Assembly (NCBI RefSeq): GCF_001194135.2
Contig: NC_069003.1
Location: 36,624,548 to 36,688,547, forward strand
Origin: Octopus bimaculoides
Lineage: Eukaryota
DNA: 64,000 nucleotides
Reading direction: 5' to 3'
The notes beneath the pieces are model-generated. The model was not told the DNA's origin, made no database searches, and saw only the letters and a program-made list of their open reading frames with translations. Position numbers and translations under genes: made by a program. This document shows positions 4,360 to 24,774 of this stretch, piece after piece. How positions within the stretch are numbered: position 1 is the stretch's first letter; each line of letters begins with the position of its first letter.

Positions 4360-24774
<20,415 letters not shown>

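What the first reader, a model, noticed from the sequence alone, without database searches (positions are those of the whole stretch)
23202..23231. Internal RRKQxxP NuRD-interaction-type motif upstream of the zinc fingers
Seen: the big exon encodes ...TPRRKQKSPRRI..., about 46 aa before the first finger. Established: RRKQxxP is the motif by which FOG1, SALL and BCL11 bind RBBP4/7 of NuRD; ZNF512B is reported to use an internal variant (recalled as RKQKTPKK) ahead of its fingers. Inference: this independently supports ZNF512B-type ancestry. It also suggests this TFIIIC subunit could recruit NuRD to B-box sites, which in this genome include abundant tRNA-derived SINEs (several with intact A/B boxes in this window), giving a possible SINE-silencing or insulator system.
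Basis: partly seen in the sequence, partly recalled or inferred. Interest (0 to 1): 0.8.

Follow-up and report, generated by a model that had tools for sequence, protein, structure and literature searches.

The report
NuRD-binding-type motif in cephalopod TFIIIC subunit
The octopus gene for the RNA polymerase III factor GTF3C2 carries, in a disordered stretch just before its zinc fingers, a 14-residue peptide that matches the known docking site for RBBP4 of the NuRD repressor complex; it is frozen across cephalopods and absent from every other animal examined, so it looks like a cephalopod-only gain, not an inheritance shared with human ZNF512B.

Summary
On the minus strand, 23231..23202 encodes RRKQKSPRRI, inside TPRRKQKSPRRI, and the first zinc-finger cysteine is the 46th residue after it. 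The gene (4363..24774, minus) is the GTF3C2/TFIIIC110 orthologue with an N-terminal zinc-finger module.

The peptide fits the N-terminal NuRD-interaction motif RRKQxxP and the internal form RK(x)xxPxK/R. It closely resembles the ZNF512B peptide crystallised on RBBP4 (KHRRKQKTPKKF). Chance is unlikely: P about 4e-4 in shuffles of the exon.

ATPRRKQKSPRRII is identical in four cephalopod sequences. Synonymous sites are saturated, and the exon is otherwise about 24% identical.

The motif is absent from more than 25 orthologues: 10 gastropods, 4 bivalves, annelids, bryozoans, amphioxus, insects and fish. In several of these an AT-hook-like RGRP motif sits in that place.

So it is probably a functional, cephalopod-specific RBBP4/NuRD docking site, likely remodelled from a basic patch. 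It does not support ZNF512B ancestry; amphioxus supports ZNF512-type fingers independently. The SINE/B-box statement is not corroborated here: no tRNA-like hits, one exact B-box. Binding is untested.

The parts
23211..23231 (-). Core motif RRKQKSP (strict NuRD-interaction consensus RRKQxxP)
   Evidence: Translation; shuffle P=3.9e-4
23202..23231 (-). RRKQKSPRRI, the finding's interval. It also fits the internal consensus RK(x)xxPxK/R (RKQKSPRR) and has a hydrophobic residue at P+3, as in FOG-1 I12 and ZNF512B F430. KSPRR also reads as a proline-directed S-P-x-R kinase consensus.
   Evidence: residue requirements from PMC11602157
23199..23240 (-). ATPRRKQKSPRRII: 14 residues identical in four cephalopod sequences (window, Argonauta hians P0015, L001/P0001, L003 transcript)
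   Evidence: Window vs L001: 9 synonymous and 0 non-synonymous codon differences. Synonymous sites saturated, pS=0.80.
23136..23291 (-). 52-aa conserved island SSKRSRKK..(12 aa)..RRKQKSPRRIIVNVDQNSMYDNEIDSNYDVGD: upstream basic cluster, motif, then an acidic/aromatic tail. KK-x12-RRKQK also fits a bipartite nuclear-localisation pattern.
   Evidence: NLS pattern by inspection
23379..23408 (-). AT-hook-like QKRKPGRTKR (KRKPGRPRK in L001), the distal basic motif shared with other GTF3C2 orthologues
23076..24774 (-). Large coding exon encoding the Ser/Lys/Asp/Glu-rich disordered N-terminal region. Start codon apparently split AT|G at the acceptor. Donor GAG|GTGAGT at 23076.
   Evidence: No Pfam domain. 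AlphaFold2 single-sequence model pTM 0.14, coil over the motif.
22401..22484 (-). Finger 1 exon, NLKCPRCEATLVSAPSLKYHLMSIHQAL (C2H2). Equivalent to the C2H2 of amphioxus pair 1.
   Evidence: junction confirmed by transcript L003
15835..15984 (-). Finger 2 exon (C2HC: CPQCGKEVRNFQYYQFHIEWC, followed by GRE)
15347..15517 (-). Finger 3 exon (C2H2: CPICNKKQRLMYMASHTNLH) plus a basic tail
4363..14080 (-). Thirteen further coding exons: linker and WD40 beta-propeller of GTF3C2/TFIIIC110, ending ...LHNLSGLFSVQQRRLWTLHVNR
   Evidence: tblastn of P0002 and P0015; named GTF3C2 hits
23667..23711 (-). Second invariant island, VSSGESTEIEEYNDI, in the same disordered exon. Function unknown.

Best explanation
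The peptide ATPRRKQKSPRRII is a cephalopod-specific short linear motif in the disordered N-terminal region of GTF3C2, the TFIIIC110/beta subunit of the B-box-binding half of TFIIIC.

Most likely it docks, in extended conformation, onto the acidic top face of the WD40 protein RBBP4/7. FOG-1, SALL4, BCL11A and the near-identical ZNF512B peptide bind that same site. Docking would tether an RBBP4-containing complex, most probably NuRD, to TFIIIC.

The motif appears to have arisen in the cephalopod lineage by remodelling the finger-proximal AT-hook/basic patch that other animals have at this position. It would then be convergent with the ZNF512B motif rather than inherited with it.

Shown: presence, match to all mapped binding determinants, disorder, strong purifying selection, lineage restriction.
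Inferred: RBBP4 binding, the NuRD identity of the partner, any effect at TFIIIC sites, and the AT-hook origin.

The basic residues probably also contribute to nuclear import, and the S-P-R-R core could make binding phospho-regulated. Both are inference from pattern only.
For: (1) Match to determinants. ZNF512B R422, K423, P427 and K429 are essential. K429R retains binding, Q424 is partly required and F430 contributes (PMC11602157). The window has R, K, P, R, Q and I at these positions. Aligned, KHRRKQKTPKKF versus TPRRKQKSPRRI is identical or conservative at all ten positions from RR to the hydrophobic residue.

(2) Predictive value. Only 23 human proteins carry RRKQxxP, and 19 of them have NuRD-interaction evidence (bioRxiv 10.1101/2025.06.23.660971).

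(3) Chance. P=3.9e-4 in exon shuffles.

(4) Selection.
- The 14 residues are identical in window, Argonauta, L001 and L003.
- There are 9 synonymous and 0 non-synonymous changes.
- pS is 0.80, i.e. saturated, between lineages.
- The rest of the exon is about 24% identical.

(5) Accessibility. No domain and coil in the AlphaFold2 model.

(6) Host. The protein is a nuclear DNA-bound factor, GTF3C2 with three fingers.

(7) Lineage restriction and likely precursor. The motif is absent from more than 25 non-cephalopod orthologues. In several of them (e.g. Aplysia, Haliotis, Mactra) the aligned column holds [KR]RGRP[KR]K.

(8) Precedent. Mammalian TFIIIC already binds a CHD4 remodeller complex (ChAHP) directly, by another route (bioRxiv 10.1101/2025.07.02.662776).
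Against: - No binding data and no complex model. A multimer prediction could not be run here.
- Only two deeply separated cephalopod lineages are sampled, and the taxa of L001 and L003 are unnamed.
- The conserved island extends about 25 residues beyond the motif (IIVNVDQNSMYD.E.D.NYD). RBBP4 docking alone does not explain that.
- The N-terminal flank (T-P) lacks the K419/H420 contacts that give ZNF512B its high affinity.
- Basic clusters are also conserved as nuclear-localisation signals.
- RBBP4 sits in several complexes (CAF-1, PRC2, NURF, Sin3, HAT1), so NuRD is an assumption carried over from vertebrate motif carriers.
- The alignment of disordered regions that suggests an AT-hook origin is soft.
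Confidence: 0.55

Rival explanations
1. The conserved basic island is primarily a bipartite nuclear-localisation signal bound by importin-alpha (KRSRKK, a 12-residue spacer, then RRKQK). Its resemblance to the NuRD motif is incidental.
For: By inspection, KK-x12-RRKQK fits the classical bipartite pattern (K/R)(K/R)-x10-12-(3 of 5 basic). The upstream KRSRKK is conserved together with the motif. Other orthologues have AT-hook/basic patches at the aligned position that could serve import. The ZNF512B disordered region also houses an NLS near its motif.
Against: A classical NLS tolerates K/R swaps and does not need Q, S, P or the II that follows. Here all 14 positions are invariant at saturated divergence. 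The exon holds several other basic clusters that could drive import. The two functions are not mutually exclusive.
Confidence: 0.2
2. The motif is ancestral. It was present in the zinc-finger-bearing GTF3C2 of early bilaterians, was inherited by vertebrate ZNF512B when the finger half became a separate gene, and was lost everywhere else except cephalopods.
For: - Beyond the consensus, the solvent-facing positions also agree: K at x5, S/T at x6, basic at x8. From exon composition that is about 0.5% by chance (frequencies).
- The finger module of invertebrate GTF3C2 is ZNF512-like.
- Human ZNF512 and GTF3C2 lie in one 417-kb interval (PMC2570409).
- An unnamed-taxon orthologue fragment (the P0017 cluster) has SSRRRKARPPRRYHFDLDDN about 80 aa before finger 1.
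Against: - It requires independent losses in gastropods, bivalves, annelids, bryozoans, insects and amphioxus.
- Amphioxus, the closest sampled outgroup to vertebrates, has no such motif.
- The position relative to the finger pairs differs: before pair 1 here, between pairs 1 and 2 in ZNF512B.
- Short motifs in basic, Ser-rich disordered regions arise easily, and S/T-P-x-K/R could be convergently favoured as a kinase site.
Confidence: 0.07
3. The island is a nucleic-acid-binding or intramolecular element: a derived AT-hook-like basic patch, with its acidic/aromatic tail folding back or contacting another TFIIIC subunit. It has no role in RBBP4 binding.
For: In several orthologues it aligns with AT-hook-like motifs. 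Conservation extends well past the motif into IIVNVDQNSMYD.E.D.NYD. GTF3C2 belongs to the DNA-binding tauB module (established knowledge).
Against: The defining G-R-P core of an AT-hook is gone (K-S-P-R). A true AT-hook-like motif is retained 50 residues upstream. The replacement matches RRKQxxP exactly rather than drifting.
Confidence: 0.13

Closest known systems
Internal NuRD-interaction motif (iNIM) of human ZNF512B, residues 419-430 KHRRKQKTPKKF (PDB 8TX8; PMC11602157)
   Same: RRKQK-[S/T]-P-[K/R]-[K/R]-hydrophobic. Internal position in a long disordered region of a zinc-finger protein. All residues shown essential by alanine scan are present (R, K, P, basic at P+2). The host fingers belong to the same broad ZNF512-like lineage.
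   Different: - The K419/H420 flank, which helps give a 19 nM Ki, is T-P here.
- It lies before the first finger rather than between pairs 1 and 2.
- The host is GTF3C2, with a WD40 propeller, not a ZNF512B orthologue.
- It is restricted to cephalopods and absent from amphioxus, so it is probably convergent.
- Binding is untested.
N-terminal NIM / FOG repression motif of FOG-1, SALL1/4, BCL11A/B, ZNF827 (MSRRKQxxPxxI/L; PDB 2XU7)
   Same: Exact RRKQxxP core. P+1 = R and P+3 = I are identical to FOG-1 (RRKQSNPRQI).
   Different: Those motifs sit at residues 2-12 next to a free N-terminus. This one is near residue 500 of about 1330.
ChAHP (ADNP-CHD4-HP1) interaction with TFIIIC at SINE B2 elements in mouse (bioRxiv 10.1101/2025.07.02.662776)
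   Same: A CHD4-containing remodeller physically tied to TFIIIC, with a proposed role in restraining Pol III-type repeats.
   Different: - The contact is made through ADNP/ChAHP, not through an RBBP4-docking peptide in a TFIIIC subunit.
- ChAHP is not NuRD.
- It is a mammalian system with direct experimental support, which the cephalopod case lacks.
AT-hook-like motifs (K/R-R-G-R-P-K/R-K) in the N-terminal region of GTF3C2 orthologues
   Same: Same region of the protein, and aligned to the motif in several orthologues. Basic, proline-containing, disordered. RKRGRPxK even satisfies the loose iNIM pattern.
   Different: The G-R-P core is replaced by K-S-P-R, and the strict RRKQ is gained only in cephalopods.

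Membership tests
NuRD-interaction motif (NIM/iNIM, RBBP4/7-docking peptide) | Strict consensus RRKQxxP | tested here: met
   RRKQKSP at 23231..23211 on the minus strand
NuRD-interaction motif (NIM/iNIM, RBBP4/7-docking peptide) | Internal consensus RK(x)xxPxK/R, with the essential basic residue at P+2 | tested here: met
   RKQKSPRR. K429R is functional in ZNF512B. Caveat: AT-hooks also match this pattern.
NuRD-interaction motif (NIM/iNIM, RBBP4/7-docking peptide) | Position at the extreme N-terminus (classical class) | tested here: not met
   The motif is near residue 498 of 1330 in the Argonauta orthologue. It therefore belongs, if anywhere, to the internal class.
NuRD-interaction motif (NIM/iNIM, RBBP4/7-docking peptide) | Located in an accessible, disordered segment | tested here: met
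   No Pfam domain. S/K/D/E-rich composition. AlphaFold2 pTM 0.14 with coil over the motif (single-sequence model, weak evidence).
NuRD-interaction motif (NIM/iNIM, RBBP4/7-docking peptide) | Evolutionary conservation of the motif against a drifting background | tested here: met
   Within cephalopods only: 14/14 identical, 9 synonymous and 0 non-synonymous changes, pS saturated. Absent outside cephalopods.
NuRD-interaction motif (NIM/iNIM, RBBP4/7-docking peptide) | Direct binding to RBBP4/7 and co-purification of NuRD subunits | not testable with these tools
   Needs ITC or fluorescence polarisation, a pull-down, or a multimer structure prediction. Only window-derived single chains could be submitted to the structure tool.
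GTF3C2 / TFIIIC110 (tau91-type TFIIIC subunit) | C-terminal WD40 propeller orthologous to GTF3C2 | tested here: met
   Hits named GTF3C2 (fish, Bugula, Biomphalaria, Branchiostoma) at E down to 4e-32. Exons mapped colinearly.
ZNF512 / ZNF512B zinc-finger family | Pfam PF21276 ZNF512_C2HC finger | tested here: not met
   The window and mollusc C2HC fingers do not reach PF21276. The amphioxus orthologue does: 45.4 bits against a cut-off of 27. The window fingers align colinearly to it: hhalign 97.9%, E=4e-13.
ZNF512 / ZNF512B zinc-finger family | Architecture of C2HC+C2H2 pairs without a WD40 domain, with the NIM between pairs 1 and 2 | tested here: not met
   The window protein has a lone C2H2, then one C2HC+C2H2 pair, then a WD40 propeller. 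Its NIM precedes the first finger.
Classical bipartite NLS | (K/R)(K/R)-x10-12-(at least 3 of 5 basic) | tested here: met
   By inspection of the, 25 sequences, KK-QSGFKHYDAATP-RRKQK fits. Pattern only; import was not tested.
AT-hook | R-G-R-P core | tested here: not met
   The motif has K-S-P-R. Several orthologues show RGRP at the aligned column.

The most novel reading that the evidence does not exclude
Cephalopod TFIIIC has acquired its own docking peptide for RBBP4. TFIIIC bound at B-box sites (tRNA genes, extra-TFIIIC sites and any Pol III-type repeats) would then directly recruit NuRD, or another RBBP4 complex, coupling Pol III factor occupancy to local deacetylation and remodelling or to insulator function.

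The peptide would have arisen by converting an AT-hook into a NuRD motif. That would parallel what happened in vertebrate ZNF512B, a gene whose finger module itself descends from the zinc-finger half of ancestral GTF3C2.
Probability: 0.2. Interest if true: 0.7.

Novelty: new member of a known kind. Interest (0 to 1): 0.45.

Why it matters
If the peptide binds RBBP4, a core Pol III initiation factor in cephalopods carries a built-in handle for a repressive chromatin remodeller. Mammals achieve a comparable link only indirectly, through ADNP/ChAHP. That would give a concrete, testable route by which TFIIIC sites act as chromatin boundaries or silencers in a lineage known for large, repeat-rich, rearranged genomes.

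It is also a clean example of a short linear motif being created, probably from an AT-hook-like patch, and then frozen for a very long time. In addition it looks like parallel evolution with ZNF512B.

Separately, the data indicate that the ZNF512-type fingers belong to GTF3C2 in invertebrates, including amphioxus. This bears on the origin of vertebrate ZNF512/ZNF512B.

Tried and rejected
- First homologue search with the whole disordered exon was swamped by low-complexity words and returned one hit.
- Third homologue search with the motif-plus-fingers query returned nothing, so named squid, cuttlefish and Nautilus proteins could not be retrieved. The two non-octopod cephalopod sequences (L001, L003) stay taxonomically unnamed, and their accessions are not in the paper library.
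- A PDB sequence search with the peptide found nothing, because chains under 20 residues are excluded.
- PDB profile searches with the finger module put ZNF512B (2GQJ; best single-domain score, 25.6 bits) and ZNF512 (2CTD) among the top hits. Generic C2H2 arrays scored alike, so this is not decisive.
- Pfam ZNF512_C2HC is not reached by the mollusc fingers.
- P0048, P0059 and P0100, considered as possible ZNF512 relatives, are unnamed paired-finger proteins without the motif.
- For the SINE claim: ARAGORN, Rfam at gathering threshold and at E<=1, the B-box pattern, and repeat and self-BLAST scans gave no tRNA-derived repeat family in this window.
- Chance conservation through low divergence was rejected because synonymous sites are saturated.

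Full report
**What is there.** The finding sits on the minus strand. Translating 23237..23196 gives TPRRKQKSPRRIIV, and RRKQKSPRRI is exactly 23231..23202. It lies near the 3' end of a 1.7-kb coding exon, 23076..24774. The product of that exon is Ser/Lys/Asp/Glu-rich, has no Pfam domain, and is modelled by AlphaFold2 as coil (pTM 0.14).

The exon ends at GAG|GTGAGT. The next exon (22401..22484) encodes a C2H2 finger whose first cysteine is the 46th residue after the motif. Two more finger exons follow: a C2HC at 15835..15984 and a C2H2 at 15347..15517. After them come thirteen exons encoding a linker and a WD40 propeller, down to 4363.

Homology searches name the gene. Hits include general transcription factor 3C polypeptide 2 of fish, Bugula, Biomphalaria and Branchiostoma. 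The closest full-length protein is an Argonauta hians protein of 1330 aa, 87% identical over the motif-plus-finger region. The window is therefore from an octopod, and the gene is GTF3C2/TFIIIC110 with an N-terminal zinc-finger module. A spliced transcript contig from another cephalopod (L003) confirms the junctions big exon -> finger 1 -> finger 2.

**Is it more than chance?** RRKQxxP occurs in 0.039% of composition-preserving shuffles of the exon. It occurs once in the six-frame translation of the window. Among 130 retrieved proteins totalling 108,306 residues, only the cephalopod ones carry it. The looser internal consensus is much less specific (3-5% of shuffles), and ordinary AT-hooks such as RKRGRPPK also satisfy it.

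**Comparison with the known motif.** ZNF512B residues 419-430 are KHRRKQKTPKKF, and that peptide was crystallised on RBBP4 (8TX8).
- R422, K423, P427 and K429 are essential.
- K429R still binds.
- Q424 is partly required and F430 contributes.
- The proposed consensuses are RRKQxxP (N-terminal) and RK(x)xxPxK/R (internal) (PMC11602157).

The window peptide TPRRKQKSPRRI satisfies both consensuses and every mapped requirement. It also shares P+1 = R and P+3 = I with FOG-1. In the human proteome only 23 proteins contain RRKQxxP, and 19 of them have NuRD-interaction evidence (bioRxiv 10.1101/2025.06.23.660971).

**Conservation within cephalopods.**
- The orthologous exon on an ENA contig (P0001/L001) is about 24% identical overall in a global alignment (35% over the BLASTP local alignment). 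The longest identical runs are VSSGESTEIEEYNDI and ATPRRKQKSPRRII.
- Across those 14 motif codons there are nine synonymous and no non-synonymous differences.
- The same 14 residues occur in Argonauta and in the L003 transcript.
- Over 295 well-aligned codons of conserved exons, window versus L003 gives pS = 0.80 (saturated) and pN = 0.073. The identity therefore reflects selection, not recency.
- The conserved island is larger than the motif. It runs 52 residues (23136..23291), from SSKRSRKK to an acidic/aromatic tail.

**Absence elsewhere.** An exhaustive HMMER search with the motif-plus-finger region returned 89 proteins. Cluster look-ups named many of them.
- Gastropods: Haliotis, Patella, Babylonia, Littorina, Lymnaea, Elysia, Candidula, Biomphalaria, Bulinus, Aplysia.
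- Bivalves: Sinanodonta, Mercenaria, Mactra, Mya.
- Annelids: Lamellibrachia, Owenia, Capitella.
- Bryozoans: Bugula, Watersipora.
- Three Branchiostoma species, plus insects.

Most share the finger triple and the WD40 domain. None has RRKQxxP. Owenia has a loose RRKSASPRK far upstream. An unnamed-taxon fragment (the P0017 cluster) has SSRRRKARPPRRYHFDLDDN about 80 residues before finger 1, which resembles the cephalopod island.

An alignment of the pre-finger regions places the cephalopod RRKQKSPRR in the column where several other taxa (e.g. Aplysia, Haliotis, Mactra) have an AT-hook-like [KR]RGRP[KR]K. Such alignments of disordered sequence are soft. Still, the simplest reading is that cephalopods remodelled the finger-proximal basic patch into a NuRD-type motif, while keeping a second AT-hook-like motif 50 residues upstream (23379..23408).

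**The ancestry claim.** The finger module of invertebrate GTF3C2 does look ZNF512-like.
- NCBI names the Haliotis fragment, and a fragment of the amphioxus gene, 'zinc finger protein 512-like'. The neighbouring amphioxus fragment is named 'GTF3C2-like'.
- Full-length amphioxus GTF3C2 hits Pfam ZNF512_C2HC at 45.4 bits against a cut-off of 27.
- The mollusc triple aligns colinearly to amphioxus with 97.9% probability and E = 4e-13.
- 2GQJ (ZNF512B) is the best single-domain PDB match to the C2HC+C2H2 pair, although generic finger arrays score similarly.
- Human ZNF512 and GTF3C2 lie within one 417-kb interval (PMC2570409).

The window's own C2HC, however, does not reach the Pfam model. More importantly, the NuRD-type motif adds nothing to this argument, for two reasons.
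- Amphioxus and all other non-cephalopods lack it.
- Finger 1 of the window corresponds to the C2H2 of amphioxus pair 1. The cephalopod motif therefore precedes pair 1, whereas the ZNF512B motif lies between pairs 1 and 2.

Convergence is the economical explanation. The agreement at solvent-facing positions (K, S/T, basic) has roughly 0.5% chance expectation from exon composition. It could reflect a shared S/T-P-x-K/R kinase consensus or basic-patch ancestry. I keep deep homology as a low-probability rival.

**The SINE claim.** In this window ARAGORN finds no tRNA. Rfam finds no tRNA-like match at gathering threshold or at E<=1. The canonical B-box GGTTCGANNCC occurs once exactly, and five times with one mismatch against 2.9 expected. 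Repeat scans find only a few short families. The statement that several tRNA-derived SINEs with intact A/B boxes lie here is not corroborated, though diverged SINEs could escape these tests.

**Mechanism and rivals.**
- Best explanation (about 0.55): an RBBP4/7-docking peptide that tethers NuRD, or another RBBP4 complex, to TFIIIC in cephalopods.
- Rival 1 (0.2): a bipartite nuclear-localisation signal. KK-x12-RRKQK fits the pattern, and this is not exclusive of docking.
- Rival 2 (0.13): a derived nucleic-acid-binding or intramolecular element.
- Rival 3 (0.07): ancient homology with the ZNF512B motif.

A mammalian precedent for a TFIIIC-remodeller link exists. ChAHP (ADNP-CHD4-HP1) binds purified TFIIIC directly and represses SINE B2 by blocking TFIIIB (bioRxiv 10.1101/2025.07.02.662776). 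That link works by a different contact.

**Verdict.** The functional inference of RBBP4/NuRD docking is plausible and now better founded, but untested. The ancestry inference and the SINE context are not supported. This is a predicted new carrier of a known motif class, restricted to one lineage. Interest is moderate.

Noticed in passing
window 4363-24774 (-); loci/proteins P0061, P0077, P0121, P0122, P0016: Invertebrate GTF3C2, including amphioxus, carries ZNF512-type C2HC+C2H2 fingers fused to the WD40 propeller. Amphioxus hits Pfam ZNF512_C2HC, and older annotations split the gene into 'ZNF512-like' and 'GTF3C2-like' pieces. Fish GTF3C2 has no fingers, and human ZNF512 lies within 417 kb of GTF3C2. 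This suggests vertebrate ZNF512/ZNF512B arose by splitting off or duplicating the finger half of ancestral GTF3C2. No paper in the library links the two genes evolutionarily.
   Followed up: partly
window 23667-23711 (-): A second invariant island, VSSGESTEIEEYNDI, lies in the same disordered exon. It is 15/15 identical between octopod and L001 and is followed by a conserved SPLH.P.S. Function unknown; it looks like an acidic, possibly CK2-type or SUMO-interaction-like motif.
   Followed up: no
window 23136-23198 (-): The acidic/aromatic tail right after the motif (IIVNVDQNSMYDNEIDSNYDV) is also conserved across cephalopods. The conserved module is therefore larger than an RBBP4-docking peptide.
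   Followed up: partly
L002 (ENA ERZ27289908), P0017/P0102-P0104: An unnamed-taxon GTF3C2-like N-terminal fragment has the same finger triple and a motif-like SSRRRKARPPRRYHFDLDDN about 80 aa upstream. The intron-less ORF abuts an RT_RNaseH ORF on a 1.9-kb contig, so it may be a transcript chimera or a retro-copy.
   Followed up: partly
window 39576-39962 (-): An exon-like ORF matches Pfam GCP_C_terminal (gamma-tubulin complex component; E=1.3e-8, above cut-off). A separate gene lies upstream of GTF3C2 on the same strand.
   Followed up: partly
window 12261-12340 (+): A sub-threshold SNORD47-like C/D-box match (35.1 bits against a gathering score of 50, E=0.006) lies inside a GTF3C2 intron but on the opposite strand.
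   Followed up: no
window 37812-38053: A near-perfect inverted repeat: 114-nt arms, 92% complementary, 14-nt loop. It overlaps a sub-threshold mir-2003 match at 37897-37968. It may be a hairpin-forming or MITE-like element.
   Followed up: no
window ~6300-7000 and ~14560-14620: Assembly gaps (runs of N) are flanked by long ATC/GAT and AAT-type microsatellites inside GTF3C2 introns. Long (ATT)n tracts also occur at 3820-3960 and 22190-22310.
   Followed up: no
window 24774 (-): The start codon seems to be split by an intron. The big exon begins G|AGC AAC AAT after the acceptor TTTTTAG, and Argonauta's protein begins MSNNVRR. An upstream exon should therefore end in ...AT. It was not located.
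   Followed up: no
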